DNA from: Asterias rubens | Taxonomy: Eukaryota | Assembly (NCBI RefSeq): GCF_902459465.1 | Contig: NC_047062.1 | Location: 21,576,001-21,640,000 of the forward strand | Direction of reading: 5' to 3' | Length of the DNA stretch: 64,000 bases | Shown: positions 32,407 to 58,004 of the stretch, piece by piece | Numbering within the stretch: the first letter of the stretch is position 1 | Layout of the letters: each line of letters starts with the position of its first letter | Program-made: the position numbers and the translations under genes | The notes under the pieces: model-generated | The model's input: the letters and a program-made list of their open reading frames with translations, nothing else | What the model was told of the DNA's origin: nothing | The model's database searches: none

Positions 32407-35400
32407 TCAACTCTCCTCAGGCAAGCGCTTATTAATCCAGTCTTTAAGCATGTACAGTTCTGGAGCACTCAGCTCATGGTATAGTTTGGGGAAGGTGTGA
32501 CAGTCACACTCTACATTCAAGTCCGATAGCTGCTTAATGGTTTCATTTGTCCAGTCACTCAATACAAGTTGGTCCCTCAGGCCTTGACAGGCAAACAGTG
32601 GAGGTGACGATGGCTTCGATTTTAGGGCCTGTTGGGGGGGGGACAAACAAAATTAATAACTTTAACACAAAAGGCATATCTCAATTATTCATTTCAATTT
32701 GATTAAACTTTATATTCGATTAAAGTTTTTCTTTGTTCAACCAAAATTACAAAGTAGCTCCAATACATGTTTTAAACTTCAGAGTTTATCAGAATAGACC
32801 GATCCAGTAGGCTCCGCCCACGACGCACGTGTGAGCAAGAACATGTGGGGCTCTCCATTGCCTTTCTGCACAACTCTGCCGCGCGCGCCAATATACGCGC
32901 ACGCATGTCGGACCTTATTTGTCGGAACTTCGTTGCATTGTGGTTGGTCAATTAGCAATGGGGCAGAGCTTAGTGGATGGGTCTATTGAATTGAATTTAA
33001 TTTAATGGTTTATTCGTCAAGTATATAAAAATACATGAAATTTATAATCCCTTTGTACAGCAACACAAAATTATTAAAATGAAAGCTTTCTCTAACTGAA
33101 AAGTCTGTTATGTAAACTGTTCAGAGGAGGAAAAATTAATCAAACAAAAAGTCTTCAACAAAATATCATTATTGTGTTAACTGGTGACCAATGCAAATGA
33201 TAAATACCACAGAAAGTGCTCTTAAATTTATGCAAGTGTCATATGACTTACATTGTATACAACTGAGTTGTCATTGAGGAAGCTCGATAGAGCAAACACT
33301 CCGGCGACATCCTGGTGGAACCGATAAGCTAAATGCATTGCCATTCCTCCACCCATTGAAAATCCTCCTGAATGAGTGAAAACAATGCACATTTATTTCT
33401 TAGCCTCTGTAAATAATAACATTGAAAATAATACAGAAATATCTCATCAGATTTTCAACCAAAAATCCTCCCTCCTCAAAAGAGCATATTGATTTTTACT
33501 GATTAATACAATAACTTTCAATTTGGTTGAGTATTGTAGTATTCTTTTCTTAGTGCTTGTTCCAAAAATAGCTTGAATGTTAAACTGTGTAACGATTCTA
33601 GTCTTGAAACAAATACTCTACAAGCCTTGCAGTCTTGTCGAATAATATAAAAATAATATAATAATTTGAGCCCTGGTTATTGAAAACCAATATTCCCCCC
33701 AAAGTGCGGGAGAACCCAATTAGGATTTAGTGTGTCTGGGCACGTATTCGGCCAATTTTCAAAGGTTTTTTCTTTCAAACTGTAACTTACCCAGAACAAT
33801 CCTCTGCTTGTCGATTCCGCCATCCACCTCGTTCTGGATGATTGCTCCAAGCTGCTCACAAACAGGATCAGTGGTTTTAAGAAGCTCAGGAACATTGGGT
33901 GATATCCTTGTTCTGTCATACCACACTGAGCTCAGCGCACCTCCAGAGGGTGTGTAAGGTCTGGAAAGCAAAAAGCAGTTGTTGTAAAAAGTTGCAGATA
34001 TTCATTTACCACCCTTAACCCTTCAAAACCCAACTGCATTTTTTGTTTGATTCTGTTGAACTGGACACGATAATCAGTAAATTTAATCAGTGCAGTGCAT
34101 ATGCCAAAGGAGCCTTGAAAGGAGCATTGTTGGCTAATAAGAAGATACACAAAAGATTCAAATAGAGTTGTGCATCTATGTTAATTGAACTAACAGTTGA
34201 AATGGAACTTGTGACTTCCTTTTAACAAAATTGTCCACAAAATACAATTCAGCAGCATTACAAACTTTAAGTTTACATGGGTCTATCTAAAATATGAAAA
34301 ATAAAAAATAAAAGAAATGTTGCATAATTATTTTATAAAACAAAATCTGCCCACAATTTTGTTTCTCCCCTTAGATTTCCAACCCTCAAATAAAACAAAG
34401 CCTACAATAAGCTTGAGGTATTCCTAAGCTAGGATTTTGTAGTCCCCCAAGTCTTTTTTTATGGGATAATTGAGGCATTTCCTTTACTGTCATAGGAATA
34501 AAAAAAACACATGTAACTGTGTTTTTTCTCCTAAGATGGCTGAGGCATTTCCTTCGAAAAAAAAACAGGTATAGTGACTATGTTTTTCCGTATAGGATAG
34601 TTCTTGGATGTTTTTCCCTTTAAAGGCAGTGAACACTATAGGTAATTACTCAAAACAATTATTAGCATATCACCTTACTTGGTAACGAGTAATGGGGAGA
34701 GGTTGATGGTATAAAACATTGTGAGAAACAGCTCCCTCTGAAGTGACGTAGTTTTCGAAAAAGAAGTAATTTTCCACGAATTTGATTTCAAGACCTCAAG
34801 TTTAGAATTTGAGGTCTCGAAATCAAGCATCAGAAAGCACACAACTTTGTGTGACAAGGTGTTTTTTCTTTCATAGGTTTGTTATTTTATGCATATGTTG
34901 AGATACACCAAGTGAGAAGACTGGTCTTTGACAATTACCAATAGTGTCCACTGTCTTTAAATAATAAGTCAGACATTTTCTTCAAGGTGTGATGTAAGTT
35001 CTACGGAAGTCAGTGTACAAAACAAGTACACAGGACCTGCGGCCATCAATGTACCATCCAAAAGGATGTTAAACTACACATTTTGATAATCAAGGTCAAC
35101 ACAGGTAGATTTGATCAAAACGGTCACAAAGCTGAGCCAATGTGAGAAATAAGGCATTAATTTTAGAAGTGTTGGAAGCTACAGGCCTAGGTGTGATGTA
35201 CTGCAAAGCATACAGGCCTGAATTGCTGTGGGTGGTGTGTGTTATATCAAGGCCTGCATTCTCATTCTCTTTTGTTACTGTTCTATTATACCTCACACCT
35301 TGTAGGAGCTGTTGGGAAGATCACTTTGATGTGAGGGAACTGGAAATCATCTTGAACCAGAGACCGGATCCATTCTAGAACACCGTCTGCTGTATCACCT

Positions 35401-37513
35401 AAAGGGGTCAAAGGTCAAATCAAATAAAAATTGTGAACCGTGGAGGAAGGAAATTTGTGAACTGAGTAAAAACTCCCTCTCGGACTGCAAATTGTCTCGG
35501 TCTCGGAGGGCTGGTCTCAGTCTCGGAAGGGCTGGTCTCGTTCTCAGTACACTGCACAATACTTCAGAACATGGATTCATTCAATTAGCTTTACCATCTA
35601 AACAGATCTAGCATGACCCAAGGATGGAAGTACAACACATACTAAGAAATGGCAAAGTAACACTAATATAGTAATAACAGTAAAATCTAACCATGGAATC
35701 TGGATGGAAATTCCATTCTCTCTCTCAGACCTGAACTTGAAGGTAGCTCTTTTCATGAAATATTGTTAGAATAGATTCTTTGTATTTATTCAAAGACAAA
35801 TTGCTCCCTCTGAAAAGTGTTAATCTATAGATGCGCTGCTGTCACTGCCTTCCTGTAAGGATTTTTTTAGGGGAAAATTTCCTCATCCCGCCGCCACTTT
35901 TTAATTCGATTAAAATAATAACTAATTAGAAGTAAACTGCGCCAATAAAGTATCTAAACACTTACACTTGGTCAGATTTATCGGAACCTGAAATAGTATA
36001 CAAAAATTTAATTGTTCGTTTCTATTCACCGTTAATTTCTGCACGTTGTGACACATCTTGTGTTGCGCTACGATGTTGTTTGGTGGATTTATGGACACTT
36101 GGGTGGCTTAAGGTCGAATTTCAAAAGTTGCAAAAGCCCCTATTCACCCCAATTCCAAAAGGGAACTCACATAAGCATCACACTCAGACAAAATCAAGAC
36201 AAAAGACACAAACTTGTTTCGTTTACATGACCATGAAATTAATTGCCGTATCTTTAACTCTAAAACTGCTGTTATCCTGTCCTCCATCATTGTCCTGAAC
36301 GGCAAGGGGTCGTCTTCTCATACTCTCAATGAGACCTCTGATCTGTCCCTGGTCAATCCCCTGCCATTTCCTGATCAGGATGCGTCGCAAACCCCTCGAG
36401 AGTGGTGTCAGGCTTTAGAGACTTGTTCACTTTCTTCTTCTGCTGCAGAAGTCACCCCCAGACGGCCACTCCTTGGCAGGTCGTCCACATTTCCCTGAGC
36501 TTGGTAGCGATTCCACCATTTACTGACCGTCGCTGGTGACGTTTTTACCTGATGAGCTGCAGCTCACATCGACGTACCGGCTTCTATCAAACCAACGATC
36601 CTTCCTCTTTCCTGTTTGGTCGTTTGAGCCATCTTTCCTGTTATCTTGAAACACCTTTCCCTGTCTTACCATTGTTGTATGCCTCCCATCTTTGACCCCT
36701 TTGCTTGGTTACTGACAATTATTGGTGAGTATATTCATCGCAACCGATTTATCCAAAACGCGACCAAAAAAACATCATTATTTTATAAAAGGCGAGCAAA
36801 AAAAAACCGCAGATCTTACTCGTCACAATACAACGATTTAACTTGAATAGGGGCTTTTGCAACTTTTGAAATTCGCCCTTAAGCCACTCAAGTGCCCGTA
36901 AATCCACCAAACAACATTGTAGCGCAACACAAGATGTGTCAAAATGTGCAGAAATTAACGGTGACTCGAAATGAACAATTATTTTTTGGCATACTGTTTC
37001 AGGTTCCGATATATCTGACCATTTGTAAGTGTTTAGATACTTTATTGGCGCAGTTTATATACATGTATCTAATTTACCTTGCAATCATCAATGAGATATC
37101 AAAAGATAGTGGGGGGATACGGAAACGTATCCCTTTTTTTATATGCTGAGCAAGTTACTGTGCTTACTAGCACTAAACTTACTAAATGCCATAAATAGAG
37201 AAGGGACCCGTCCCTGCCTGAAATTGACCCTTGCCACTGCCCTGTATCATGGAGGTAGAATCCCATGCCTGTATGTACACAAAAATATCATCTGGGTGGA
37301 CACATCACATGGCAGGTGACGGTGCAGCACTGCAGGTACTACCTGAGGTAGACATAATGGTTAGGAATGGGGAAAAGTTTGACAACTAGAGTAAACCATG
37401 AACAAATACTGAATGTATTTACCTGATCCATGAAGAAAAATTACACTTGCAGTGTGTCTTTTCAGCGGGGCTAGAATGGTAGTTTTTAAGCTTGCCACCT
37501 TCCCAGTCGCCAT
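32407..37513 (-). CDS. LYPLAL1: Lysophospholipase-like 1 (acyl-protein thioesterase family alpha/beta hydrolase), 5 exons, 232 aa
   Basis: Exons: 37513-37423 (91 nt), 35398-35299 (100), 33960-33791 (170), 33367-33252 (116), 32628-32407 (222). Motifs: [30 protein letters not shown] (nucleophile Ser), [27 protein letters not shown] (Asp), YHEL (His). The catalytic triad is intact. Confidence 0.95.
32795..32985. mobile_element. TAGACC-terminal MITE in LYPLAL1 intron 4
   Basis: TIRs TAGACCGATCCAGTAGGCTCCGCCC / GGGCAGAGCTTAGTGGATGGGTCTA around a GC-rich core in an AT-rich context. Confidence 0.75.
34620..34960 (+). mobile_element. TTAA-flanked MITE family A (Kolobok-like) in LYPLAL1 intron 2
   Basis: TTAA|AGGCAGTGAACACTATAGGTAATT at the start and AATTACCAATAGTGTCCACTGTCT|TTAA at the end. 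Confidence 0.9.
35935..37055 (-). mobile_element. Tc1/mariner internal-deletion derivative, about 1.12 kb, with about 215-bp TIRs and TA target duplication
   Basis: TA|AACTGCGCCAATAAAGTATCTAAACACTT at the left end and AAGTGTTTAGATACTTTATTGGCGCAGTT|TA at the right. The inverted repeats (about 35935-36148 and 36845-37055) enclose the transposase remnant. Confidence 0.88.
36280..36632 (-). pseudogene. Tc1-like transposase remnant: N-terminal paired-like HTH joined to the C-terminal tail, DDE core deleted
   Basis: My translation is [56 protein letters not shown], with an internal TGA. After a deletion and frameshift it continues [35 protein letters not shown], matching the Tc1 C-terminal W..I...LI.SMPRR..AV...GG pattern. 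Confidence 0.85.
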
Positions 37514-39320
37514 TGTTGAACCTCTGTGAACTTGCGCGTCCTGGACTAGAGAGGGCGGTATACCACATCAGCGGTGTTCCAATCTGGGAGCAAAAACAAG
37601 TCTGATGGCTGGGCCCCCATGCACCAGCCTTTGTTAGCTTTCCATCAAATGAAAATTTTGGACTTCTCAAGTTTCCGAATTTATGTTGGATTTTGAAGAA
37701 AACACAAGGACTACCCGTGACTACACGTAACGCTGAGTAAAAATTGAAATGACCCGATTGTACGTTCCATGGCTTTAGAAAGATTTTATATGAAAGCCTA
37801 ATAATAAATATTAAAAAAAAACATATTCGTAAAAAGGTTTTACATCCATTTAAATGTTTACATTTTACATAATTAATCAAAACACTAGTGCAGGGTGGGT
37901 GAACAGATAAAACGATTGAATGAATGAATGCTACAACAAGACGTTTTATCAAAAATATAATTGGCCTTAGTAAACAAATAAGTTAATACGTAACAGTTAG
38001 CCTCTTTAATAAAGAATAGTTATTATTCCTTGCTTGCCACACTAAAATAGGAATGTCAAGTCTACAAAAAAACGGACATAGTTGGAGAGTCACTGTTCGC
38101 CTACCCTACCCGAGTGTACCCATTTTTGTTTGCATAATGACACTCACCCTGCCCACCCACGCACTGGGAGAATACCTGGCTGACTCGTCTACTTCTACCT
38201 CCATGGACTCCTGCAAACCTCTTCCTGACTACCCACCCCCCCCCCCCCCCCGCCAATTCCCGAAAACCATCCCCATACCCCCACCTTACCAGCTGCACAA
38301 GAAAACAAACCACTATGATGATTTAGTAAACGTGTTTTTATTCTGTTCATAATGGCCAGCATATTTTGCCAACCAATATTAATTCCTATAATACCATTAT
38401 GGCAATTATCGTCCTGCGATTGATCGTTTAAAATACCTGTGGTCAATAGGGGACAACAAACCCGTAATACCTCATGCTCACCTACAGGCCTACCACCCCA
38501 AGTGGAGTGAAAATGCGGCTAACCGTGCAGACTTCCGATAACAATACGTGGTGGTCCACCACCACAAACATTTTGCTAAAATGTTGTTTTGTAATTTAGT
38601 ACGACTGTTGGTGAAAATAAAGGTAGGCCACCAGCCTATACTTGATGGGCCATATGGAAAACCAATTTATTTTATTATGGAGTAACCGATGAGCCTGACC
38701 CAAGTACAAGTCGCGGTTTCGAAAAGGCCCATCTTGCCACCACGACTTTGCTGAATTGATGAAAATCAAAACTTGTAAATCAAAACCACCCCCAACTCAT
38801 TCAGAGATGGTCATTACATGGTGTTACCGCAAACCTTTCCACATCGTATTTCCACCATGCAAAGTTTCAAAATCCTACTCAAAACTTTTATTTGGGGTCC
38901 CTAACCCTTAATGAGTTCGACGTTCGAACGGTTAGAGCACGCGTCCAATATTGGTGATAATTGTCAAAGACCATTATCTGCTATTAGTGTGACCCATCAT
39001 TACATGAAATAACTACAGCTTGGGCAAGTTTAAAACCAATCGGTCAGCCCCTTAACCGTGCCTTTATGCCCCGCCCCCATGGAATTATCTGGTTACGTCA
39101 CTGCATGACCGCCTTTGAAGGATTCTAATTATTCGCAACGAAGCGAATGGAACCATGATCATTAACGCTCTCTTACTAACCCATTTTTAGAATGAGTGAC
39201 AACTATTGGTATCTTACAACTACACCATGTTCTGTTTACATCCACATTCCCGGTTGTCACGTCAGTGTGTATCTCCCTCTCCCACCAATCGAGGTGAAGG
39301 TTTTTACTTCTGATTAAACC

Positions 39321-39352
39321 CACTTCCACTTTCACTTTCGGAAAGAGGAAGT
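39321..39352. promoter_or_regulatory. IRF plus ETS/PU.1 motif cluster between LYPLAL1 and TGFB
   Basis: CACTTCC, ACTTTCACTTTC and AAAGAGGAAGT all fall within 32 bp. Function is untested. Confidence 0.4.
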
Positions 39353-42300
39353 CCTGTTTGAATGTTTGTCTCCTTGCAAACAACACTCAACAACCAAACA
39401 AGAAAAGAAATTACTCAATTACTGAGATGATTCACGTGTATTGTATCTATTCCATTGCTCATCACTTTAAGTTGTTCGCAGGACTTCCCTTTTACAATAA
39501 AAATGTTAAACTTATACCTGTTTGTATGTGTTGTGTTGTCATTTTTGCCTTCGAGGTTCGAAACGTTAGGCCGATAACTATTCTTCCAGCGAGAACGTCA
39601 TCAACAACACTCAATATGACTGTCTTGATATGAAGCTGACGTGTGTTTGTTTAAAATTTTAAACCTCATAAAACAAACACAGGTGTTACTGAAATTTTAT
39701 CACAATGGTTTTACACTAGTTTGGGCCTGTTTTTCGGAGATATAAAGTATGGTCAAAGTCACAGTGCAAAGCAACCTTTTACTAAACGGTGAGTTAGTTC
39801 ATTCCAACAGTCACTGACTTCTTGACAACCACAAAATGCTACGAATCGTGAAAATCAACCAACACGGGCACAACCTTGCGTGGGCGATCCGTCTATACAT
39901 AACTTCTCATTTTCAGTCAGTCCGTCAAATTATTATTTTATTATTTTTATTATGGGAATAACAAATTGCTTCCGGAAAATCGACGCCGCAAAAACTAAAA
40001 TAAATGGAGAAACAAATAAACGCATCAATCAGACGTCTAAGACTATTAATTAAGACAGCTTAAACAAAATGTGTTTTAGTTATAAACTTATTGTTTTTCC
40101 CACAACTGTCGCACACTGTTCCGGTTTGGGCCTGTAAAGATGTCGTAGTGACGTATTGTTTGTATTGACCCAACCTTCCTCAAGTTGGTTATCAACAAGT
40201 TATGTAGTCTAGAATTCATCTTGGAATTCTCGGATGAGGCGTGTGTGTTTTAAGAAAGGAGTGGGTGCAGATCGGCCTGAAATAACAGTGGTGGGCTTTC
40301 TGTTGAAGGCTAACAACAACAAGACACGTCAGAATAGAAAAGTAGAAAACACCGGTGCAATATTTTGTTCGATTTGTCGGCAAAATGCAAATACTTGAAA
40401 AAAATGAAAATTCTTTCTAAATGTATCTATAATAATATCAAAACAAAATTATTGATTTGAATTAATATTATTTTCTCATTTCAGAAAAGAAAGGCGGTTG
40501 TGTTCATTAACATTAATCGTGAAATAATCCAGAAGTCTGTCCAGACCTTCCACGATGTACCACCCACAACTGTCACCCCAGTCTTCAGCCCAACCCTTCC
40601 CAAAACCAACATTTGAAGAGAAGAGAAAAGGACCCCTTCTTGGAACTATTGTTGCACTCATAAAAATAAAGCACCAAGGCACATTGCCATGGCCAGTCTT
40701 CATGATTTCGCCAGACGGTTTGGACACAGGCCAAAATCTTACTTATTATCCAAACTTCCAAGGGTTTCTCGGGAAGTCGATCTCCCGACCCACTCCCCAC
40801 GTAGCTGGTGGCCGTGTCAGGTGCGCCAAAACACGGGTGAGTCATCCTCGGGGATATACCTCAAAGACCGTCAACAACACCGGGGTCCCGGAAGTCAACT
40901 CGACCGCACACTCTTGTCTGTTTACCTCTTGGGATAATCGCACACAGAAACCACAACAATGCTGATTTTGGCTTCCTGATGACAAATTCCAAACTCGGCA
41001 AGAATACCCTGCTTGGTGAATAATAATCCCACATAAGGTTCATAATTTATGACTGGCTAGGTGAAACTTTTGATTTACTGTCTGTGGGTAAACGTATATA
41101 TGAACCGGAAATGTCATGGGCGAATTTTGTCTGACTTTTACTTTTATTGGGGATGCATTTATCTTTCATCAACGCTGATTAATGGGCAGTTGTTCTAGTT
41201 TGGTATAAATTAATGGCATCCGATTGTGCTGTGGGCGTATTTGGGTTAATGCACCGAGTCCAGACCCGGCCAGTACTTTGGTGGACGTGAAGGTGACCGC
41301 TGTGGGAGGGGGAGGAGGGCACGCGCCCACCCTACTGAAGTTGATGTCCACACCCCCGTGCCAATTTAAAATCTGCAACCTTGAGATTAAAAATGACAAG
41401 AATGAAATGTACTTTTGTTTAGTACAACTCAATAATGAAAAATGTTGTTTGCTTCTACGCAGACAATGTATTTGTTTTTACCTGCACGTCAGGTTATCTT
41501 ACAATAAGGCATAACAAGAGCTGATGAAAAAGTGTCTCGTTTATTAGATTAAATAAAACACAATTTTTGAAATGAACAAAAAAGTGGGGTTCCTCTTGCG
41601 CCTATTATTAATTAACTCAGTTCACTGCTTGGGTGAGAGATGTTTAAGAGAGGGTGTGAAAGCTGGCGGAATAGATAGTGGACATCGCAACTCTTCTGAT
41701 ACCAATGTGTCGTATACTTTACACTCATACCCCAACCAAGATCCCATTCTTGAATGAATTAAAGCCCATCTATTGGCTAGACTAGTATCTTGACCAAAAA
41801 AAGTTATTCCTCTTTACTCTGTCAACACATTTTTGGTGATGTGACCCACAACGAACATTCCAATGATACTTGCTAACTATGTTGACAGTTTCATAATAAA
41901 TTACGGATGATGTTCTCTCATTGCGAAATGTGTGAAGTTTCAAAGAAAAAACTCACTTTGTTATAAATAATGCGGATTCTTCCTCACGGCTCTCACATTT
42001 TTGTATAGCGCCCTCTACCCAATGTTTTCAAACGGGACAGTTCGTGTGCTCCATTATCTTCTCGTCTGTTTTGAGTTTTTTTTAAACATCCCTAAGGCCT
42101 ACCAACATTCACACCAAGTGTATTCCAATTAGCTTGATACCGATAATAACGTTGTCGGCCTAGAGGGAGTTCATTGCCTTTAGTCCATCTGAACAGAGGT
42201 GCTACAAAACTAATTAAAGATTGATATTTTCTTTTTACAAAACAGATGAAAAAGTAAAAGTAAAAAGAATTAACAAAATAACAACCGTAAAAGCTGGAAC

Positions 42301-42771
42301 TGAAAAAAAGGAACCGAGAAACATAACAATTGTTGATATTTTTACTGGACTGACGATTTTGTGATTGGAGAGGCAACAAGAGTGCCTGTTTCTTATTTAC
42401 GTCACAGACACTGCATCCGCCATGTCGACAAAAACTGTGTCTGTAATTGGTCAGTGTTGTTTGACATTGGACAACGAAGAAGAAATGCCATTTTTACCAA
42501 ATCAACTTTAACCGAAATAAATATTTCAGATAAATCTATAAGTCAGTTATATTAAGCACGAATCCACAGTAATCCACAGTTCTTCATTTTGGCCTTTTTG
42601 GCCCGGGAATACCTGGATATCACCAGCTATCAAGTTCCGGCAATAAGCCGGATAGATAAGATAAGGATATACTGTACTCAAATTTGATCGGATTATCGGC
42701 AAGGCAGATTAGAACCTAAAACGTCTGTCATGCTAGACGCTCTATCTGACCATAGAGCATGATCTGACCAT

Positions 42772-42786
42772 AGGTCAAACTGACCC
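42772..42786. promoter_or_regulatory. IR3 (ERE-type) element AGGTCA-AAC-TGACCC upstream of TGFB
   Basis: Perfect GGTCAnnnTGACC core, with extra TGACC half-sites near 42747 and 42765. Function is untested. Confidence 0.4.
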
Positions 42787-43184
42787 TCAGCTATTGGGGT
42801 AGGGTGATCTTGTGAAATCATCGTTTTATTGATTGATATTTTGTCAGCTTAGAGGTACGTCTCCTAAGAGCATGCCACGGGCTGTTTCGTCTCGTTAACA
42901 CTTTGATCAGCGAGAGTACGGACAGCCAGCGCACACAGACCGGGCCGTCAGGAAACCTCTACGCCCCCATGACATCCAGCCACCCCAGTCCCGTCCCTGT
43001 TCGGTGGTGGTCTAGACTCTAGACCGAGTAACAGAAATAGCTATCGTCTTCGTCATCATCCCCGATACCGCCAAAACACCGTCATGACGCGTCACACCAA
43101 AACATACATGTGTTGCGTCTAACAACATAAACTGTTATAGTAAACTTTCCTGCAAAGGTTAATAATCACAGTTCCATAGTAGAC

Positions 43185-46600: not shown

Positions 46601-49600
46601 TACAACTCTTTGTCCCAAAACAAACACAAACCATCCGAAAGGTTGAAAATTTAATGAACTGACAGAGAGCTTTAGACATTTTATTCATTATGGGTTTCAA
46701 TTTCCAGCGTTGATGATTACTTGTTATTTTATTTTTTATAAAAACAACCGACAAGAACACAATATAGATGTTATCAACTTGCAAGTTGGTTTTAGGATAC
46801 AATAGGCACTGGTCCACTACCAATCAACTACAAATACCACCATTGTTGTTCGTCCCAAACTATTCTTGGGTTTGTCCCCAAATAGACGCCTGTACCCCCC
46901 CCCCCCCCTCCTAAAAGTCGTGTGGTCATTTCGGGATTCGATCAAAACCAGGAGTTGATATTTTGGGCCACTCAGAGATGACTGACCACAAGGCTATCAC
47001 ATTATTGGGATCATAAATTGTGGATAATGATACAACCACAGCTTAAAGCAATCATACACTTTAAGCCACACGGCCTTGTCTTATACCCATACTGGACCAG
47101 CCCAATGGGATATCCTGATTTTGTTGGGTGAGCAGTTGCTCCTTTATGTCTTTTATTTTGTGCAATGTGCGAAATATGGCTTTGATTTAAAGTAAGTAAA
47201 CATGTCTGGTTTACATCGACTTGAGGAATGCAAGTGCAGTTTGTTTTCTTGAATAAAAACCCCAAAGTCAGTTTGAATCATCAACGATGCTCAAATACAT
47301 GGATAAGGCACACCAAAACATAACAGTATTTTGCATTATATTTATACCCGACCACAAATTTGAAGTGCATTTCTTTCAACGTGGCACGGGAGTGCGTTTG
47401 TAAATTGCCAATTTGCCAAAGAAAAATCTGTTAGTAATGGTTGAAGCTTTGCATGGGTGAATAGTAAAGATGAATGATAAATAAAAGTAAACCTCCTGGT
47501 ATAACCATAATCTCTTTTGGGGGAGCCTTGGCTCTGAAAAGAGCCGGTGTGGTATCGACGCTTCGAACAGACTCTGCTCGTCATCAGGAGAAAGAAAGCA
47601 CAAAATAATCTGCAAGTTTGACTCCACACCGAAGAGACCTACAATCATTGAAAGTGCGCACCTGTTAGTTCGTTTTCAGTCAAGTTCACTCCAGCATTAT
47701 CAGCATACCATTAATTATAATCAAACACCATCTAGAAATTCCACACAAAACTGCTAGAACTATTGAAAACGAAAATATGAAATAATCATTTGCTATACTC
47801 GCGTGGGTGGTATTATATCATGGCTGTTCCGAATTATCACAACGCAAAACATTTTTCCACGCCACAAAAAATAATCCCTAAATTGACACTGTAATTTTAA
47901 GCCCTTGGGTGTTGGTCAAGGTTGTTCATGTCAGTCATTAAGGATCGTTCTGACTGCCGCGTCACAGAAAGGTAGAAACAGACACAGAGACAGACGGACG
48001 GAGGGGGGGGGGGACACAAGAAGGGACGCGAAAGTTATGATCACTTTCGGTTGTGTGTGTGGGGAATCATTTCTAGATTTGATTGGTTTTTAAGTCGGGT
48101 TGGGACGTCTTAAAGCACGAATCAAGTCTTCTCACCTTGAGCTCTGGAGTTTGCGAGATCATCAAACGGGGGCCTCTGGTAATGGCATCATCTTCCCCCG
48201 CCGTCCAAGCCAGCCGCGCGGGGTGAGTGACAACATTTAAACGGGCAAGGTTACAGGTATAAACTTGCTTGGAGTGCATTGCCACTCGCTCTGCAACATT
48301 TAACAGAATCGAGAATGAAAAAAAACCCTCAACAAACCAATAGATGAATTCAAGTTAAATTCTGAAAAAGAGTGGCACCACCGAGCACTTAAGTTCAGGT
48401 CAGGCAATTTCGTTTTGTGATGTAGGCCTCACACTTTGAGGCTCGTGAATTACGCCAGATATCTCACTATTTTTAGCGCACGTCCATAATCACCTTTGAC
48501 CTCCCATTCATCTCACACGGCCATTGTGGTTCTGGAGATTCACAGTTAAATGGGACGTACATACATGAAGCTAAAAGCTGTCTTTATTCTTTGCGGATAA
48601 ATAAAGGGGACCAGTCTAGGTTTGTAGCAACAGTGGGAGACATGGGACTATTCGCAGACGCTGGAGGGCTTTTTGATCTTGAGATGTCCAGAGTGCCCCT
48701 CTCCTAAGGCTAAGAAAGTCACAAATGTTAAGCTGCTAAGGAGAGGATGTGTGGATGTACTAAAAAGGGACCAAACTTAAAGAGACACACTTGGAACTCC
48801 GAACAAGCTTACTCACTTTGCACTCTCAGAAACACTCGGCACGTGTTTTTCTTCGGTGACGCACTTTAATAAGTCCGCCATTCTAGCTTCTCCAGACACC
48901 TCAACTCTTCAGTTTACCGCTAGTCCAATCATTGTTGAAAGGGTTGATGTAGCTATAAACACATCGTACGCAGCACATAAACCTGCAGCGAAATTGCTCT
49001 CAGTACCATCTGGTGATACACCATTAATTCTGGTAGAAACATTTAACCGTATAAAGAAGGGCTTTAAACAAGCCACAGACAGGCCCTGACGATTATGTCA
49101 AGTATTCAACACAAATCACACACATTTGTTATGATACTTAAAGCGGCCGTCCTGTACACTTTTGGCAACGACTAGAAACGTTTTGTGCTAACTGTTTTTT
49201 TAACTTAAGGTTGTATAATGGTGAAGATGTGCGATGGTTTAACTACTCTTCTAAGTACATTGATGACTTATCCACCTGGTGTGTGGTGTATGACAGAAAA
49301 TATGAAGACATACATATTTTAAATACGATAACCATAACTTGATATCGGTTTTCCAAAAACTCTTCAACAAAACTCAAGTTCACAAGACTATGATCTTGTC
49401 ATCAATGATAAGTTCCGAAGGAAAACAAAATATATATGCTATGATTGATTTATAAGCATTTTACAAACGGTAAACCAGACCAGACCAGACTCGTTGCATA
49501 AAGAAGTTGACATGAAGTAACGGCTGGAATAAATTCCAATTCCTTATTGGAATGAATGCAACCACGCCCCCACTAAAACTAAGAGATTGACGATGAAACC

Positions 49601-52600
49601 ATGACACGCAAACCTTCACTGTGTATCTACGATGTGTAAACTCTGTCTAGAGTTTGAAACGCAAAATGTTGTACCCACTTTTGTAAAATGTTTGAAGGAT
49701 AAAAAAAACTTAGCATTTTGACACCTGCTGAAATGGTTTGTAGCATTCGAACACACACAAAGATTTTAAACGTGTTTTAGGTTATAAACATGGGGGAAAA
49801 TGGTTACAAATCCTACGCTGTTTTGACGGTGTACGGTGCTCAAAGGAAAAAAGGAAGGCAAATTCTATTGATATCAAAATATGTTTTAAACTAGTTTAGG
49901 TTAGCGATCCTTTGTTTCTGTCATTGATTGTGAAAAGGTGTTGGGGATATAGAATAGACACGTCTTGTTGACGAATGTTTATACTCAAAGATTATTGGTG
50001 CTAATTTTCGGTACCTTATGGAGAAGAACAAAACATAAAAAGGGAAAATAAAAGGACCCCACAGGGGAATTCTAAATACTGGTGTGCCCCACAAGGAAAT
50101 GAGTGTATAAAGTTTGTAAGAAACTTTTGCGTGCAGCGACAAGGAAAGAACAACATAATGCTGCACAAGGATTCATTTTTGAGAATAAATATAACCATGT
50201 ACACAATCAGTGCAACAAAGTTATACCTAAAAACTACAATTACTTCTTATACATGGTAAGCCATAACACGTAGATTTGTTACCGTGTCCTACAGCTTTAT
50301 TGCAAACACAGCCACAGACAGATGGGAGTAACCTTCAGGTTGACCTGAACCCACTCAGGTCAAACATTCAGATCAAAAAGAGCCCGCAGCACAAGACGTT
50401 ACAACTTGAAGTGTTACAAGATCTGCTGTAGGGAAAGTGTAACTGTACTTTTTTTGCAGTCACATTTTGGGCGGTCGTTTTGCAATCTGGCCAGATTGTC
50501 AAACTTCTCTTGAAAAGCTGTTGAGAAGTTACATCTTTTCTTAAGTTTAACACCTGCTATGAAAAAGGGGTATTTCAGGAAAAGAAAACATAAACCGGTG
50601 ATTTAGTTTCCGTACTTGATGTATTTATATTTAACATTTTGAATGACTTCTTATAAAATAATGTCAAGAGATATAGCGCTTCTCTTGTAAGCTGTTGAGA
50701 AGTTATACATTGTCTAAAGGCTAACCCATGTTCTGAGGGAATAAAAAGGTATTGGGAAAAGAAAATATAATACTGTAATTCAATTCATGTTCCGATGTAT
50801 TTATATTTAACATTTTGAATGATTTGTGTATAAAATAATATCAAGTGAGTGAGCTGGAAAAGTTCCAAGGCCGGCTCATTATGTAAAGTAAATGTCATGA
50901 AATGTCAGTATAGCCGCATCCAGAAGATGTGCTAGGAATTTAAAGCAGTTCGAAGGTTCTTCAGACCAACGTTTCCATAGTTTCCAGGACATGAATTTAT
51001 TTCAGTCACGAATGCACAGCTTGAGATCCACAATTGAATTATTGTTTATTTTATTTGTAAGAGAGGGTTAATTGTACACGCCAATCCGAGACATTAGTGT
51101 TGCGCATAATGCAGGAGCTTCTTTGCACAACACACAGCTTAAAACAATGATATGAAATGTATAAAGCAATAGTTCAAAAATAAAGATTCAAGCAAATGAG
51201 TCTTTAACAGTCCCTTGAAATACACACATTCAAATATTGAAAGCCCTGATAGGCAAAGTTACATAAAACTGAAAATAACCAATTTCGAAGAGAGATGATT
51301 TTTGTGCTTAAAAGCACAAACCGTAACTAAGCACATTCACAATCAATTTTGCATACCAGAATACGGTTACCAGCCAAAATAGCTTTTCCCATGTACCATG
51401 TGCAACTGATATCCAGTTTATTTTTCCGAATCAGAAATCTTCCAAGTAATGTTGACTGTTTAAAGACACCGGACACTATTGTTATTGTCAAAGGCCAGTC
51501 GTTTCACTCGCTGTGTCTCAACATATGCATAACATAACAAACCTGTGAAAATTTGAGCTCAATTGGTCGTCGAAATTGCGAGATAAAAAAGAAAAACCAC
51601 CTTGTCACAGGAAGTTGTGTGCATTCATCAGATGCTTGATTTCGACACCTCGAATTCTAAATCTGAGGGGTCTCGTAATCAAACTCTACTTCTTTCTCGA
51701 AAACTACATCACTTCAGAGGGAGCTGTTTCTCACACTGTTTTATACTATCAACTTGTCCACATTACTCGATACCAATTAAGTTTTTAATGCTAATACTTA
51801 TTTTGAGTATTTATCAATAGTGTCCACTGGCTTTAACAACAAGCACCTGTGTAATCAACTTGACATTTATGAACCTATAAAGAGTGAAAAACCTCACAGC
51901 TGATTCTTCAGAAGTTAATCTGTGTCCTGAAAGGTTTTTGATCAAAGCATGGATGTTCCTCCTCGATCAAAGCTTATCATGATCAGTTGATTAAATCATT
52001 GCATTATAACCAATTGGATAAATACATCATAAAGCTATTGGGTTTCCTTGGAACAGCTGGATTATGTACTATCTTTCTATAGGGTTTGTATACACATAAT
52101 ATAACCAGATACATGGACCAGGATATTAAACTAATGCGTTTTCCATTCATAACATGATCTGGTGTGATTAACAGCCTCTATAAATAAGTCATTCCACACG
52201 GCACCAAAAACAAGTGCGGCAGTCATCAAAGGGGAAGAGTGATTTATTTGTTTGTTTATTTATGTATTTATTTGTATACTTATTTATTGTAAAATAAATC
52301 AACTAAACAAACTTTTTGTTTATTTGATTTAAATAAATAATTAACTAGCTATTTTTCTTCTTTTTATGTTTTTGTTTTCTATATATTTTTATTTTATTGT
52401 ACACTTTTTAAATTAGTCCAGTGAGTATTTGTTCCGCTATTAACGCTTCCATGGACAATACAGGCCAGAAACGTGCAGTCTGTTAAAGGCCTGCGCTATG
52501 CATAATGATAAATGTTCCTCAAAATATTTATAATTATCGAAAGCTGTTGAGGCTTCTAAGAAAAATATTTGTGTGCCATTCATTTTATAAGTGATTGTGA

Positions 52601-55600
52601 TTTTTATATCAAATGTATACCTTCCCTTAAACGTGAAACGAAACACCAACTTGTACATGGGCCATTTTACAGTTACTATAAAGCCTTTTAAAGTAAGAAT
52701 GTGAGTTATGAAAGTTAACACATTAGTAGAAACTATATCGTACTGAATCCAAGAAGAAAACTGTATGTTTATTTGTTTTCTTTAATTCGTGGGAATTAGA
52801 ATAACGTGAATTACTTTCGGATGGAAGTGCGGTTACACGAAGGTCAGATATTATAAAGACAGGAAAACACACTGTGTCTACTGGCATCAGGTTCCCACGA
52901 CTCTTAATATTTACCACACGTTTTAAATTTATAATTTAATGATTTGTATGCAATGCATTTATTTTGAAGATGTGCATGTACTTTTGTTTAATTTTATTTT
53001 TTAAATATTCGCTACCTTGGAGTGAGGACAAAACAGAAAAGGAAAACAAAAAATGTCCTCTTTATAGGGGAATTCTAAAGACTGGGGTGCTCCAGAAAAA
53101 CATGTGTGTATAGTCTATATAGGGGGAAAGTACAGCGATAAAGCAATGAACAAAATATGTATCAACAGGCATGTACAAATAAAATAGAATGCAAGCCTGA
53201 AATTTCATCTTTGAGAGGGCAAAGCAAATGGTCATTTTGCAAAGGGCACCATATAAGTCTATGGGAAACTTTTGAAAGGAATCACGGCCAAGACAAGGTC
53301 AACAGAGGCCAAATGTGTGTGTGTTTTTAAATGTGTTGAAGTCACAGACCAGCCTTCACAAGATCCATATGCCTCCACACATCTCTCACTTTCTTTCAAA
53401 ACATTTGAAAGCGATTGGCCTTTGTATAGTGCCTAATTGGTAATACAGAGTATACCTTGCTGTTATTTATACCCTACACTTGTTGATAAAAGTGTTGCTT
53501 TGTAAACAATAAAGCACATGAGTAATCCTTTTGCTTTCCCTTTAAATATTCAGAAGACTCATCGGACAACTACCAGCCCACTAAAGCCGGGATGTCCAAG
53601 TTCTTCCGATTCGACCTCTCCTCCTACTCCACCGAAGTCAACTCCGAGGAGGTGTTCGAGGCCGAGATGCGGCTCTACCAGCTACCCAACACCAACATGA
53701 ACATGGAGCAAAGGATTGACGTGTTTCAACTCCTCCCAAAACCAAACGATGATCCAGATAGGAAACACATTTACAGTACCATACTCAGTACAACCAGAGA
53801 AGGCTGGATCAAATTTGACGTCACAGCAGCCGTCAGGGACTGGGTGATTATACCGGGTAGGTTTTAGCGGAGCCACGCACCAATATTAGCCCCCATCCCC
53901 CGGTGAAAGTAGGGACAGTGGGGGAAAGAAAAGTTCAAGCCAATTAGTGAAAGATATACCACAACAATTTTGAGATAGATTATGCACCATTTAAGGCACT
54001 ATTGATAATAGTTACTTAAAATGATTGTTAGCATAAACACTTAGTAAGGAGCAACGGAGAGCTGTTGATAGTGCAAAACATTGTGAGAAACGGCTCCCTC
54101 TGAGGTCACGTAGTTTTTGAGAAAGCAGAAATTTCTCACTCAAATCTGTATTAAAATACTTCAGGCCTGAAGCCCTTTGTTGGGCATATGAAAACACACA
54201 ATTAATTTGTGCAACAAGGGTGTTTTACTTCATTGTTTTCTTGCAACTTCGATTACCAACTGAGTCCAAATGCTCACAGATTTATTATTTTATGCATATG
54301 TTGGGATACACCAAGTGAGTGGTCTTTGAAATAAATTCTTTTAGAATAATGTATTTTAATGGTGTTGATCTTTGCACCGAATGGCTACCAGCCAGAAAGT
54401 CAGTCTAGTCATAGAGCTATGAAAATACTCCATGGTCAAGTATGGTATGACTATCTTCAAAGACTTTCCCAGTTTCTAGATACACTCCACATGAGGTATA
54501 ATGCCAGCTTGGCATCGCTCACTAGGAATGCCCCCGGTTCGACGCGTCAAACGCCCCCTCACTGTATCGCACCGAGCTGGTAAGAAGGCAGAAGAATCCT
54601 GAAAACCAGCCGTAGTGACATTCCTCACAATCACACGATTTTAGATCACACTTAAAATTCCTCGCGTGGATTCCAAGGGAGGGCGGTAAATTAAATATTA
54701 TTGAAGGATAATTCTAGAAACAACTTTATAATGACTTGGTGGTGGCAGTTAGCTGAGTTGAGGAAGAGCGGAAGACTAGGTTTAGTTAACCATGGAACAT
54801 GAGTTAAAGGAACACGTTGCCTTGGATCGGTCGAGTTGGTCTTTGAAAAGCGTTTGTAACTGTTTTTTAATAAAATGCATATGGGTAGAAAGATTTTGTA
54901 AAAGTAGAATACAATGATCCACACAAACATGCCTCGAAAATGCACGGTTTTCTTTTTACCTCGTCGACTAACACGGTCGGCCATTTATGGGAGTCAAATT
55001 GTTGACTCCCATAAGTGGCCGTCCGTGTTAGCTCGCGCAGTAAAAGGAAAACCACGCAATTTCGAGGCAAACTTGTGTGGATCATTGTATTCTACTTTGA
55101 AAACATCTTTCCAACCGTATGCGTTTTATAAAAAGCGGTTACAAACGCTTTTTATAGACCAACTCGTCCGATCCAGGGCAACGTGTTCCTTTAACTCGAC
55201 TCTGCATTTACAACCGATCATTGGCCCATAGAGATCGGCAGTTTCAAATGCTGTTTTCATAACACCATGACTGCTTTAGCAAAACTTATATGTCCATAAC
55301 ATCATGCCTGCTCAGCAGGTCCTTGGCTGCTAACCAGAAAGCTGTTTGCATTACATCATTAACTGCATTATGACTGCTTAGCAGAAAGCTGTTTCCATTA
55401 CATCATGACTGCTTAGCAGAAAGTTGTTTCCATTACACACTTGACTACTTTTTAGCAGAAAGCTGTTTGCATTACATATTTGGTGGCTTAGCATGCAGAC
55501 AGCTGCATTGCATTACATCACGACTGCTTAGCAGAAAGCTGTTTAAAATCAATGACTGTTTTGTTTTCCACTCTCAAACAAAAATGTAAACAACCTCGGA

Positions 55601-57580
55601 GTCCTTCAAGGTTCCAAAACAGAAAGCTTCAAGATTTCCACTAAGATCAACAATACTCCCAATATTCCGTCCTCTACTTCCTGTTTGCAATCCCTCAAGA
55701 TAAAAGACATGACTCATTCCAGGCTTTCATGCCTCCATTCACAAAGCAAAATATGGTTGTCTAAGTTCTCCATCGACGAAATCCTCCCCAAGCCGCGAGG
55801 CTCAAGAGGATGACGATAAAGGATAATAGATGAGCTGACAACTGTTTGTGTATAGAGTACCAAGTCGACCTTGATGTGAGAGTTCCGAGTCATTCCGAAT
55901 GATGTAGTCATTCTTGTATAATAAATCCCTGACTATCTGACCCTTTTCTTTGACTCAGGATTTTGTCACTGTAATGCAAGCTGACTTCCGGTCACAACAA
56001 TTACAAAACACATTCCAGAAGACGATCAGAGCATACTGAACGAAACGTCGAGTTGAAACCAGCGATTCTTTTCAGAACCACCCCAACTCGTACTACAAAA
56101 TGAAATAAATAAATTTATACCATGACTTGGAAGTCATCGATAATTAAACTGGCACTGTGCCAGAATAGCTATATATATTTTTTAAGGAATATAAAATTTG
56201 CCTCGTGACACTTATGTCGTTTTTAATTATGATGGAATACAACCATTTCGTTTCTTCCCTTTCGACACAGGTTCAAACCAAGGAATTGAGGTCACAACAG
56301 CGTGTGACACAAGAATCCATGTCCTTTTTGCGGGTAAGTTTCCATCTACTTTAAATCCACTTAAAGGCACTGATGTACACTATTGATTTACTCAAAATAA
56401 TTGTTTAGCATAACTACTGACTTGGTAACGAGCAATGTAGAGCTATTGCTAGTATAAAGCATTGTGGGGAATGGCTCACTCTGAAGCGTAGGTTTTGAGA
56501 GAGAGGTAAATTCTCAATCAAATGCATCTTGAAGCACACAAAGTAACGCAACAAGGGTGTTTTTCCTTTCGTTACTCTCTTGCAACTTCGATGGCCAATT
56601 GAGACAAAATTTTCACAGGTTTGTTGTGTATGCATGTTGGGATACACCAAGTGAGAATACTGGTTTTCGACAATTAAACCAAACGTGTCCATAGTGCCTT
56701 TAAAGAAGGGATCTAGTTAACGTTGGGCGGTCGGGTGTTCAAGGGTCAAATAATTTGTCAAGTCACTCGGAATTATAATTGTATCAATCCACGCCCTAAG
56801 TTCACAGAGGTGGCGGCAAGAGAAGGGCGGGCTTATCAAGGAAGGGTTCACGATGATAATGACCGTTGGGGAGTTGGCCATTATTAAAGCAAGATATCCC
56901 ACAAGGGTGGGGCTCTGACATGGCTCTTTGATAACAACCCATATAGCCCTTGTTGTGAAGGTCATTGACCTCATGTATCTACGTCAACCCCACCATTTTG
57001 TTTTTGGTGTCAACTCGCAGTTCTAGTTACTTAACGATTTTGGTTTATCGTCCTTTGACCAGATCCAAGGGGAACTATGCCAAGTGTTGACATGCCGCCG
57101 AGAGGTGACCAGATAATGCCAGAGAAGAGCCCAAAGGAACAGCACCCACGCCTGGTCGTCTTGGCCCCCGCCAACGACACCCTCGGCCCCAATGGAGGAG
57201 GCCACAACCGGAGACGCCGAAGCACCTCCACTTACGGACAAAACACATGCGCCGATCAGACGCAGCCTAGCTGCTGCCTACGACAGTTCTATGTCAACTT
57301 TAAACACGACCTAAACTGGTCTTGGATACGACAGCCCAAGGGTTATTACCCGAACTACTGTGCCGGGTCGTGCTCGTACGTGAACGGCAGTGTGTGGAAC
57401 TCACAGACTCACCACGCTCAAGTTTTAGACACATATAGGAAGTTAAACCCGGATGCGTCCCCGTCGCCCTGCTGCTCCCCAAGAAGTTTTAAACCCCTTC
57501 ATATTTTGTTTTACGATAACGGTAGGCCACTGTTTAGAGAACTTCCCAATGCTATTGTTACATCATGTCAGTGTAGCTAG
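43630..57580 (+). CDS. TGFB: Transforming growth factor beta proprotein (TGF-beta sensu stricto), 4 coding exons, 407 aa
   Basis: Exons: 43630-43969, 53554-53856, 56271-56333, 57063-57580, all introns phase 1, total 1224 nt. It has a signal peptide, QCK...AIKAQILSKLGL, EEYFAK, FRFD and GWIKFDVTAAVRDW. The furin site RRRR is at 57209-57220. The 119-aa mature domain has 9 Cys and carries CCLRQFYVNFKHDLNWSWI, PKGYYPNYCAGSC and NPDASPSPCC. The 43570 ORF start is a GTG, so 43630 is the first in-frame ATG. Confidence 0.95.
44064..44215. mobile_element. Degenerate TAGGAC/GTCCTA-repeat interspersed element in TGFB intron 1
   Basis: Repeated ttaggac / gtcctaa motifs occur in both orientations. I recognise the pattern but have not verified it by search. 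Confidence 0.4.
44578..44713 (-). mobile_element. CAGG-terminal hAT-like MITE fragment in TGFB intron 1
   Basis: aagggca..gcaccaaggcatttt..caagggcaccaaggcaatgacc..cgttgcctccgtgaag matches the 21811 family. Confidence 0.7.
50515..50848. repeat. Two-copy tandem duplication, period about 174 bp, in TGFB intron 1
   Basis: aagctgttgagaagtta and gatgtatttatatttaacattttgaatga each occur twice. Confidence 0.85.
51460..51836 (-). mobile_element. TTAA-flanked MITE family A (Kolobok-like) in TGFB intron 1, reverse orientation
   Basis: TTAA|AGACACCGGACACTATT at the left and AATAGTGTCCACTGGCT|TTAA at the right. The body is the reverse complement of the 34620 copy. Confidence 0.88.
53991..54330 (+). mobile_element. 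Degenerate family A-related MITE in TGFB intron 2
   Basis: Shares aaaacattgtgagaaacggctccctctga, acaagggtgtttt and ttatgcatatgttgggatacaccaagtgag with family A. The termini are eroded. Confidence 0.75.
54804..55194. mobile_element. Foldback (long palindromic) TTAA MITE, 383 bp plus TSDs, in TGFB intron 2
   Basis: TTAA|AGGAACACGTTGCCTTGGATCGG at the left and CCGATCCAGGGCAACGTGTTCCT|TTAA at the right. Arms of about 190 bp pair across the centre ATGGGAGTCAA-ATTG-TTGACTCCCAT. Confidence 0.92.
55330..55547. repeat. Degenerate tandem repeat of about 35 bp, roughly 6 copies
   Basis: Recurrent GCAGAAAGCTGTTT(G/C)CATTACATCATGACTGCTTA. Confidence 0.85.
56361..56703 (+). mobile_element. Family A-related TTAA MITE in TGFB intron 3
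   Basis: TTAA|AGGCACT at the start and AGTGCCT|TTAA at the end, with internal family A blocks. Confidence 0.82.
56959..56971. promoter_or_regulatory. Perfect IR1 nuclear-receptor element AGGTCA-T-TGACCT in TGFB intron 3
   Basis: Exact match to the FXR/RXR- and EcR/USP-type consensus. Function is untested. Confidence 0.45.

Positions 57581-57972: not shown

Positions 57973-58004
<32 letters not shown>

What the first reader, a model, noticed from the sequence alone, without database searches (positions are those of the whole stretch)
32407..57580. LYPLAL1 directly beside TGF-beta: candidate ancient deuterostome microsynteny
Seen: LYPLAL1 (minus) and TGFB (plus) are adjacent and head-to-head, with start codons 6.1 kb apart and no gene between them. 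Established, from recall and to be verified: human TGFB2 and LYPLAL1 are neighbouring coding genes on 1q41, separated by a gene desert with trait-associated non-coding variants, and they lie in the same orientation there. Inference: the linkage predates the echinoderm-chordate split, which would fit a genomic regulatory block with a developmental ligand and a housekeeping bystander. It would also mark TGFB2 as the vertebrate copy that kept the ancestral neighbour. The compact interval here makes any shared enhancers tractable.
Basis: partly seen in the sequence, partly recalled or inferred. Interest (0 to 1): 0.75.

Follow-up and report, generated by a model that had tools for sequence, protein, structure and literature searches.

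The report
Sea-star TGF-beta, LYPLAL1, TTLL neighbourhood

Summary
The window is Asterias rubens LR699092.1:21,576,001-21,640,000. A 5-exon LYPLAL1 (minus strand) equals the NCBI protein exactly. A 4-exon TGF-beta sensu stricto gene (plus strand) lies head-to-head with it. The start codons are 6,116 bp apart, and the interval has no annotated gene, no domain-bearing ORF, no known RNA family and no RNA cover apart from a dispersed repeat.

Direct adjacency appeared in no other invertebrate I could check:
- Patiria miniata has no TGFB within 10 kb of LYPLAL1.
- Apostichopus japonicus has the two genes 17.1 Mb apart on one chromosome.
- Two hemichordates have a long TTL-domain gene head-to-head with LYPLAL1 instead.
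- Styela shows neither gene beside LYPLAL1.

A third gene ties the data together. A 1.3-1.5 k-residue TTL-domain gene lies tail-to-tail with TGFB in Asterias and amphioxus, and spans it in the sea cucumber. Vertebrate TGFB3 is linked to TTLL5, and TGFB2 flanks LYPLAL1.

The most economical reading is an ancestral block TGFB> <TTLL LYPLAL1>, with one inversion in the Asterias lineage. No species outside Asterias was shown to hold all three genes together. I found no conserved non-coding elements, so the regulatory-block idea has no support. I rate it a new member of a known kind, of moderate interest.

The parts
32407..37513 (-). LYPLAL1 orthologue: 5 coding exons (37513-37423, 35398-35299, 33960-33791, 33367-33252, 32628-32407), 232 aa
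   Evidence: The spliced model is 100% identical to NCBI A. rubens LYPLAL1 P0125. Against solved structures, human LYPLAL1 scores E 9e-76 versus APT1/APT2 at about 1e-25. Pfam Abhydrolase_2 hits fall on exons 3-5. The GFSMGG serine, the Asp in CQGLRDQLV and the His in YHEL align with the human protein.
37514..43629 (.). 6,116-bp interval between the two start codons, holding both 5' UTRs and promoters and otherwise silent
   Evidence: No annotated gene. No Pfam hit in the 8 longest ORFs. No Rfam or tRNA hit. RNA cover is limited to 37440-37639, to the stretch from about 43237 onward, and to the repeat at 38790-38871. No conserved non-coding match to loci of 6 other species.
38790..38871 (.). 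Short dispersed repeat inside the interval
   Evidence: 97-99% of raw reads laid here run on into unlike sequence, and depth is in the thousands. Copies lie at window 56023-56080 and in a Patiria LYPLAL1 intron, L002 14892-15032.
43630..57580 (+). TGF-beta sensu stricto gene: 4 coding exons (about 43630-43968, 53553-53858, 56273-56332, 57062-57580), 407 aa
   Evidence: Exact match to the NCBI A. rubens protein P0243. Pfam TGFb_propeptide and TGF_beta hits. Against solved structures, TGFB3 scores 1.5e-66, TGFB2 1.9e-62 and TGFB1 9e-52, versus activin and GDF8 at about 1e-20. The sequence shows RGD, an RRRR cleavage site and nine cysteines in the ligand.
57581..64000 (.). Spacer downstream of TGFB. 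The third member of the neighbourhood, a 1,366-aa TTL-domain gene on the minus strand, ends about 894 bp beyond the window end (window-equivalent position about 64,894).
   Evidence: the look-up of encoding contigs for P0243 shows the TTL-domain gene at L007 31265-33951 and beyond, convergent with TGFB and 7.3 kb past its stop codon.

Best explanation
The locus carries the starfish orthologues of LYPLAL1 and of the single invertebrate TGF-beta (sensu stricto) gene. They are neighbours because both descend from a small ancestral deuterostome neighbourhood of three genes: TGFB, a long TTL-domain (TTLL5-like) gene lying tail-to-tail with it, and LYPLAL1 lying head-to-head with that TTLL gene (TGFB> <TTLL LYPLAL1>).

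In the Asterias lineage one inversion of the TGFB+TTLL pair, or an equivalent move of LYPLAL1, brought the 5' end of TGFB to face the 5' end of LYPLAL1. This gives <LYPLAL1 TGFB> <TTLL.

After the vertebrate genome duplications the block was resolved reciprocally. 1q41 kept TGFB2 and LYPLAL1, and 14q24 kept TGFB3 and TTLL5.

Shown here: the gene identities, the Asterias order, TTL-LYPLAL1 adjacency in two hemichordates, and TGFB-TTL adjacency in amphioxus and sea cucumber.

Inferred: that the TTL-domain genes are all TTLL5 orthologues, that the ancestor had all three genes together, and the direction of the inversion.

The two starfish genes most likely have separate promoters about 5.6 kb apart. 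Nothing indicates shared regulation.
For: - Asterias has all three genes in a row.
- Ptychodera flava and Glandiceps talaboti have a TTL-domain gene (1,524 and 1,331 aa) head-to-head with LYPLAL1. Neither has a TGFB exon within 10 kb.
- Branchiostoma floridae has TGFB followed 2.2 kb downstream by a convergent 1,523-aa TTL-domain gene.
- Apostichopus TGFB lies inside the range of a 1,487-aa TTL-domain gene on the opposite strand.
- Vertebrate TGFB3 is consistently linked to TTLL5, lamprey included (PMC8931421).
- TGFB2-LYPLAL1 is named as a flanking pair in human (PMC3494872), and the two genes are close in chicken (PMC9823035).
- My own rough estimate: assuming about 13 TTL-family genes (a recalled figure) among about 20,000 genes, the chance that a TTL-domain gene is LYPLAL1's immediate neighbour is about 1e-3.
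- From my memory of the human map, TGFB2 and LYPLAL1 share one strand. That is what the TTLL-in-the-middle order predicts after loss of the TTLL copy.
Against: - No species other than Asterias was shown to have all three genes together. I could not obtain TGFB positions for the hemichordates or Patiria, nor the LYPLAL1 position for amphioxus.
- Orthology of the TTL-domain genes to TTLL5 rests on size, Pfam domain and position only. The catalytic exons were outside the fetched flanks.
- The Patiria head-to-head neighbour (1,421 aa) has no Pfam hit on record. Its first exon resembles the hemichordate TTLL first exon only in composition.
- The linkage is absent in sea cucumber (17.1 Mb apart), in Styela and in a wasp.
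- Lytechinus shows no gene within 10 kb of TGFB.
Confidence: 0.6

Rival explanations
1. Coincidence on a shared ancestral linkage group. LYPLAL1 and TGFB simply stayed on the same ancestral chromosome and became neighbours independently in Asterias and in vertebrates.
For: The genes are 17.1 Mb apart on one chromosome in Apostichopus. They are not adjacent in Patiria, the hemichordates or Styela. Among roughly 20,000 adjacent pairs, a few tens could match human neighbours by chance within linkage groups (my estimate).
Against: This needs a second coincidence: a long TTL-domain gene beside LYPLAL1 in two hemichordates, and beside TGFB in Asterias, amphioxus, sea cucumber and vertebrate TGFB3 (PMC8931421).
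Confidence: 0.2
2. Direct LYPLAL1-TGFB adjacency is ancestral and is held together as a genomic regulatory block, with TGFB enhancers in or around the bystander LYPLAL1.
For: Head-to-head adjacency in Asterias. TGFB2-LYPLAL1 flank a large human interval that carries GWAS signals (PMC3494872, PMC8374389).
Against: Direct adjacency was seen in none of the five other invertebrate deuterostomes in which LYPLAL1's surroundings were read. No conserved non-coding match was found between the Asterias interval and any fetched locus. The vertebrate ultraconserved-element cluster with TGFB2 extends toward ESRRG and does not list LYPLAL1 (PMC3436827).
Confidence: 0.08
3. The three-gene block is ancestral, but the Asterias order (LYPLAL1-TGFB-TTLL) is the original one and the hemichordate TTLL-LYPLAL1 adjacency is derived.
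For: Asterias is the only species in which all three genes were seen together. Vertebrate TGFB2 is next to LYPLAL1 with no TTLL between them.
Against: This needs more steps: a rearrangement shared by two hemichordate families and probably Patiria, plus an inversion to reach the same-strand arrangement in vertebrates.
Confidence: 0.12

Closest known systems
Vertebrate TGFB2-LYPLAL1 neighbourhood (human 1q41, chicken chromosome 3)
   Same: The same two orthologous genes are neighbouring protein-coding genes (PMC3494872, PMC9823035; orthology).
   Different: Hundreds of kb separate them in vertebrates, against 6.1 kb here. In human they lie on the same strand (from memory), here they are divergent. 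TGFB2 is one of three paralogues, while the starfish has one gene.
Vertebrate TGFB3-TTLL5(-ESRRB) linkage (PMC8931421)
   Same: TGFB lies next to a long TTL-domain gene. This is seen here in Asterias, amphioxus and sea cucumber.
   Different: TTLL5 orthology of the invertebrate genes was not tested. The published comparison covered vertebrates only and did not connect the linkage with LYPLAL1.
Ancient metazoan microsyntenic pairs and genomic regulatory blocks (Irimia et al. 2012, cited in PMC4729200; hundreds of deuterostome micro-syntenic clusters in PMC4729200)
   Same: A developmental signalling gene kept beside housekeeping-type genes across phyla.
   Different: No conserved non-coding elements or chromatin contacts are shown here. 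The LYPLAL1 link is broken in several lineages. The best-conserved partner is the TTLL gene, not LYPLAL1.

Membership tests
LYPLAL1 (lysophospholipase-like 1, alpha/beta-hydrolase) | Closer to LYPLAL1 than to the paralogues APT1/LYPLA1 and APT2/LYPLA2 | tested here: met
   Against solved structures, human LYPLAL1 scores E 9e-76 (257 bits) versus APT2 at 2.4e-26 and APT1 at 5e-25. The database search returns proteins named LYPLAL1 across animals. In the tree it groups with Patiria LYPLAL1, far from a fungal APT1.
LYPLAL1 (lysophospholipase-like 1, alpha/beta-hydrolase) | Abhydrolase_2 fold with a Ser-Asp-His triad | tested here: met
   Pfam PF02230 hits on exons 3-5. The GFSMGG Ser, an Asp and the YHEL His align with the same residues of human 3U0V. 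That these are the catalytic residues is from knowledge of the family.
TGF-beta sensu stricto (TGFB1/2/3 subfamily) | Closer to TGFB1-3 than to activin, GDF8/11 or BMP over both the prodomain and the ligand | tested here: met
   TGFB3 1.5e-66, TGFB2 1.9e-62 and TGFB1 9e-52, versus GDF8 and inhibin beta A at about 1e-20. The alignment spans residues 29-407.
TGF-beta sensu stricto (TGFB1/2/3 subfamily) | Prodomain (LAP) with RGD, a basic cleavage site and a nine-cysteine ligand | tested here: met
   PF00688 and PF00019 hits. RGD, RRRR and nine Cys after the cleavage site are read directly in P0243. RGD in invertebrate deuterostome TGFB is reported in PMC8931421.
Conserved deuterostome microsynteny (gene pair or block retained from the common ancestor) | The same adjacency in lineages on both sides of the echinoderm-chordate split and in outgroup ambulacrarians | tested here: inconclusive
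   Direct LYPLAL1-TGFB adjacency was seen only in Asterias and as flanking genes in vertebrates. The chain TGFB-TTL (PMC8931421) plus TTL-LYPLAL1 supports a three-gene block. All three together were seen only in Asterias.
Genomic regulatory block (target gene plus bystander) | Conserved non-coding elements spread through the interval or the bystander gene | tested here: not met
   Sensitive blastn of window 37514-43629 against the Patiria, Lytechinus, Apostichopus, Ptychodera, Glandiceps and Branchiostoma loci found only one repeat. The test was limited to 10-kb flanks and to distant species.
Genomic regulatory block (target gene plus bystander) | Physical enhancer-promoter contacts across the bystander | not testable with these tools
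   Needs Hi-C, 4C or ATAC data from sea-star embryos.

The most novel reading that the evidence does not exclude
TGF-beta sensu stricto, a deuterostome novelty, has sat tail-to-tail with a TTLL5-like gene since the deuterostome ancestor, with LYPLAL1 at that gene's other end. The TGFB-TTLL5 pairing has survived in echinoderms, cephalochordates and vertebrates because TGFB regulatory elements lie in or beyond TTLL5. On this reading TTLL5, not LYPLAL1, is the bystander. The block would then mark the birthplace of the TGFB gene and would give an anchor for assigning the TGFB1/2/3 paralogous chromosome regions.
Probability: 0.3. Interest if true: 0.6.

Novelty: new member of a known kind. Interest (0 to 1): 0.42.

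Why it matters
TGF-beta proper arose on the deuterostome stem (PMC4729200). A neighbourhood traceable from starfish to amphioxus to two different human chromosomes would give a positional anchor for its origin and for how TGFB1/2/3 were sorted after the vertebrate genome duplications. It would also point to TTLL5 introns and flanks, rather than LYPLAL1, as the place to look for ancient TGFB enhancers. For the human 1q41 interval between TGFB2 and LYPLAL1, which carries lung-function and hernia GWAS signals, it suggests the two genes are neighbours by descent and not because they share regulation. The compact Asterias interval shows no conserved elements, so it is a poor proxy for the human gene desert.

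Tried and rejected
- Literature searches for LYPLAL1 with TGFB2 and synteny, LYPLAL1 with microsynteny, TTLL5 with LYPLAL1, and TTLL5 with microsynteny found nothing relevant.
- The first look-up of sequencing runs attempt failed because the machine was busy. A repeat succeeded.
- The protein-atlas search returned no usable protein ids.
- A search with the TGFB last exon alone gave only 4 short hits because of the length window. I used one of them as a scaffold for a profile search. That search still returned no hemichordate or Patiria TGFB, so their TGFB positions remain unknown.
- No amphioxus or sea-urchin LYPLAL1 id was recovered among the top 120 hits or the 20 representatives whose names I looked up.
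- tblastx between the window's ends and the other loci, and between TTLL gene fragments of different species, gave nothing beyond low-complexity matches.
- A motif scan found no TTL catalytic exons in the fetched flanks, so the TTLL paralogue could not be assigned.
- The Patiria neighbour's first exon is not significantly similar to the hemichordate TTLL first exon once composition is controlled.
- The contexts of Lytechinus TGFB, Styela LYPLAL1 and wasp LYPLAL1 were uninformative or negative.
- A related sea-star contig carrying P0239 had no DNA available.
- I rejected a classical bidirectional promoter. The transcribed ends are about 5.6 kb apart.
Full report
**Where the window comes from.** A 25-kb public locus fetched with the LYPLAL1 protein is 100% identical to window 22407-47513. 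A second locus fetched with the TGFB protein fixes the strand. The window is therefore Asterias rubens assembly GCA_902459465.3, chromosome LR699092.1, positions 21,576,001-21,640,000, plus strand.

**Observation.**
- On the minus strand I assembled a five-exon gene: 37513-37423, 35398-35299, 33960-33791, 33367-33252 and 32628-32407, with GT-AG at every intron.
- Its 232-aa product is identical over its full length to the NCBI A. rubens 'lysophospholipase-like protein 1', P0125.
- On the plus strand, the 407-aa NCBI A. rubens TGF-beta protein P0243 maps exactly to four coding exons at about 43630-43968, 53553-53858, 56273-56332 and 57062-57580.
- The start codons face away from each other and are 6,116 bp apart.
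- The public annotation lists nothing between them.
- The eight longest ORFs of the interval have no Pfam hit, and there is no Rfam family or tRNA.
- In four RNA data sets the only cover is at the LYPLAL1 5' end (37440-37639), at the TGFB 5' UTR (from about 43237-43330 onward) and at an 80-nt dispersed repeat at 38790-38871. At that repeat 97-99% of reads continue into unrelated sequence.

**Gene identities.**
- The hydrolase matches human LYPLAL1 (3U0V) at E 9e-76 over residues 5-231, against about 1e-25 for APT1 and APT2. It keeps the GFSMGG serine, the aspartate and the YHEL histidine.
- In a maximum-likelihood tree it pairs with Patiria LYPLAL1. All animal LYPLAL1 proteins are separated by a long branch from a fungal APT1, but the deep nodes are unresolved.
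- The ligand gene matches the TGFB3, TGFB2 and TGFB1 proproteins at 1.5e-66, 1.9e-62 and 9e-52 over both the prodomain and the ligand, against about 1e-20 for GDF8 and activin.
- It carries RGD, an RRRR cleavage site and nine ligand cysteines.
- The 'would refute' clause about hydrolase orthology is therefore not triggered.

**Gene order elsewhere.** I used annotated public contigs with 10-kb flanks.

| Species (group) | What was seen |
|---|---|
| Patiria miniata (another asteroid order) | LYPLAL1 has a 1,421-aa product with no Pfam hit on record head-to-head 8.8 kb upstream, and an SNF transporter downstream. No TGFB exon by tblastn. |
| Ptychodera flava and Glandiceps talaboti (two hemichordate families) | The head-to-head neighbour is a TTL-domain protein of 1,524 and 1,331 aa. 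No TGFB exon within 10 kb on either side. |
| Apostichopus japonicus (sea cucumber) | LYPLAL1 follows an MTA-like gene. TGFB lies 17.1 Mb away on the same chromosome, inside the range of a 1,487-aa TTL-domain gene on the opposite strand. |
| Lytechinus pictus (sea urchin) | The TGFB gene is 34 kb long, with no other gene within 10 kb. |
| Branchiostoma floridae (amphioxus) | TGFB is followed 2.2 kb downstream by a convergent 1,523-aa TTL-domain gene. |
| Styela clava (tunicate) and a wasp | LYPLAL1 has unrelated neighbours. |

**The third gene.**
- The hemichordate result, together with my recollection that human TTLL5 abuts TGFB3, predicted a TTL-domain gene on the far side of TGFB in Asterias.
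- The look-up confirmed it. A 1,366-aa TTL-domain gene on the minus strand, convergent with TGFB, ends 7.3 kb past the TGFB stop codon. That is about 894 bp beyond the window's end.
- Human GWAS literature names TGFB2-LYPLAL1 as the flanking genes of a 1q41 locus (PMC3494872). It also places a TGFB2 intronic SNP at 218.52 Mb and a LYPLAL1-AS1 SNP at 219.68 Mb (PMC8374389).
- In chicken, TGFB2 is at chromosome 3 position 19.45 Mb and LYPLAL1 lies between 19.12 and 19.26 Mb (PMC9823035).

**Model.**
- Two adjacencies are each seen in more than one phylum: TGFB tail-to-tail with the long TTLL gene, and that TTLL gene head-to-head with LYPLAL1.
- If one gene, TTLL5, is involved in both, the ancestor had TGFB> <TTLL5 LYPLAL1>.
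- Loss of one paralogue on each duplicated vertebrate region then gives TGFB2> LYPLAL1> on one chromosome and TGFB3/TTLL5 on another.
- One inversion of the TGFB+TTLL pair gives exactly the Asterias layout <LYPLAL1 TGFB> <TTLL.
- TGFB2 is only one of two vertebrate copies that kept an ancestral neighbour.

**Weak points.**
- I could not obtain TGFB coordinates for the hemichordates or Patiria, nor LYPLAL1 coordinates for amphioxus. The search tools returned no ids for them.
- All three genes were therefore seen together only in Asterias.
- The TTL-domain genes are equated on size, domain and position. Their catalytic exons lie outside the fetched flanks, and their terminal exons are too divergent to match.
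- The Patiria neighbour's acidic, serine-rich first exon resembles the hemichordate one only in composition: 28 and 59 of 500 shuffles reached the observed score.
- The LYPLAL1 link is clearly dispensable, because it is broken in sea cucumber and tunicate.

**Regulatory-block idea.**
- The 6.1-kb interval has no detectable sequence conservation with the corresponding flanks in Patiria, Lytechinus, Apostichopus, the hemichordates or amphioxus. The single hit is a repeat.
- The two transcription units start about 5.6 kb apart, so this is not a bidirectional promoter.
- In vertebrates, the ultraconserved-element cluster that contains TGFB2 is assigned to ESRRG, RRP15, SPATA17, TGFB2 and USH2A, and LYPLAL1 is not listed (PMC3436827).
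- If any neighbour is a regulatory bystander of TGFB, the more persistently linked TTLL gene is the better candidate. This is untested.

**Novelty.**
- Conserved micro-synteny is common: hundreds of clusters are reported in deuterostomes (PMC4729200). TGFB3-TTLL5 linkage within vertebrates is already published.
- I found no paper connecting LYPLAL1, TTLL5 and TGFB across invertebrate deuterostomes.
- I rate this a new member of a known kind, of moderate interest, and worth a quick check on complete chromosome annotations.

Noticed in passing
window about 22400-30352 (minus strand), extending further toward the window start: The gene downstream of LYPLAL1 is annotated as a 1,400-aa product with an SLC3A2 N-terminal domain and two alpha-amylase domains. 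That is about twice the size of a usual SLC3 heavy chain. Its first exon ORF at 29915-30352 hits PF16028.
   Followed up: partly
window 35933-37057 (LYPLAL1 intron 1): Two copies of about 214 bp in inverted orientation, 91.6% identical (35933-36146 and 36844-37057), flank ORF fragments that look like a Tc1/mariner helix-turn-helix region (about 36411-36665). This is probably a decayed DNA transposon.
   Followed up: no
window 38790-38871, 56023-56080; L002 14892-15032: A short dispersed repeat of about 60-80 nt is present in very many transcripts, with depth in the thousands in RNA contigs and reads. It is shared between Asterias and Patiria and often occurs as inverted or tandem partial copies.
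   Followed up: partly
window 43630-57580; L005, L006: The echinoderm TGFB genes of Asterias and Lytechinus have 4 coding exons, with the whole ligand in the last one. Amphioxus TGFB shows 7 separate tblastn matches, and zebrafish TGFB3 has seven exons (PMC8931421). This points to intron loss in echinoderms or intron gain in chordates.
   Followed up: partly
L009 (Apostichopus japonicus CM075705.1 6.57-6.61 Mb): The sea-cucumber TGFB gene lies entirely within the annotated range of the TTL-domain gene on the opposite strand. It is either nested in an intron or the gene model is over-extended.
   Followed up: no
window 57101-57109: An RGD motif lies in the TGFB prodomain just upstream of the RRRR cleavage site. 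This is consistent with integrin-type activation motifs reported for invertebrate deuterostome TGFB (PMC8931421).
   Followed up: partly
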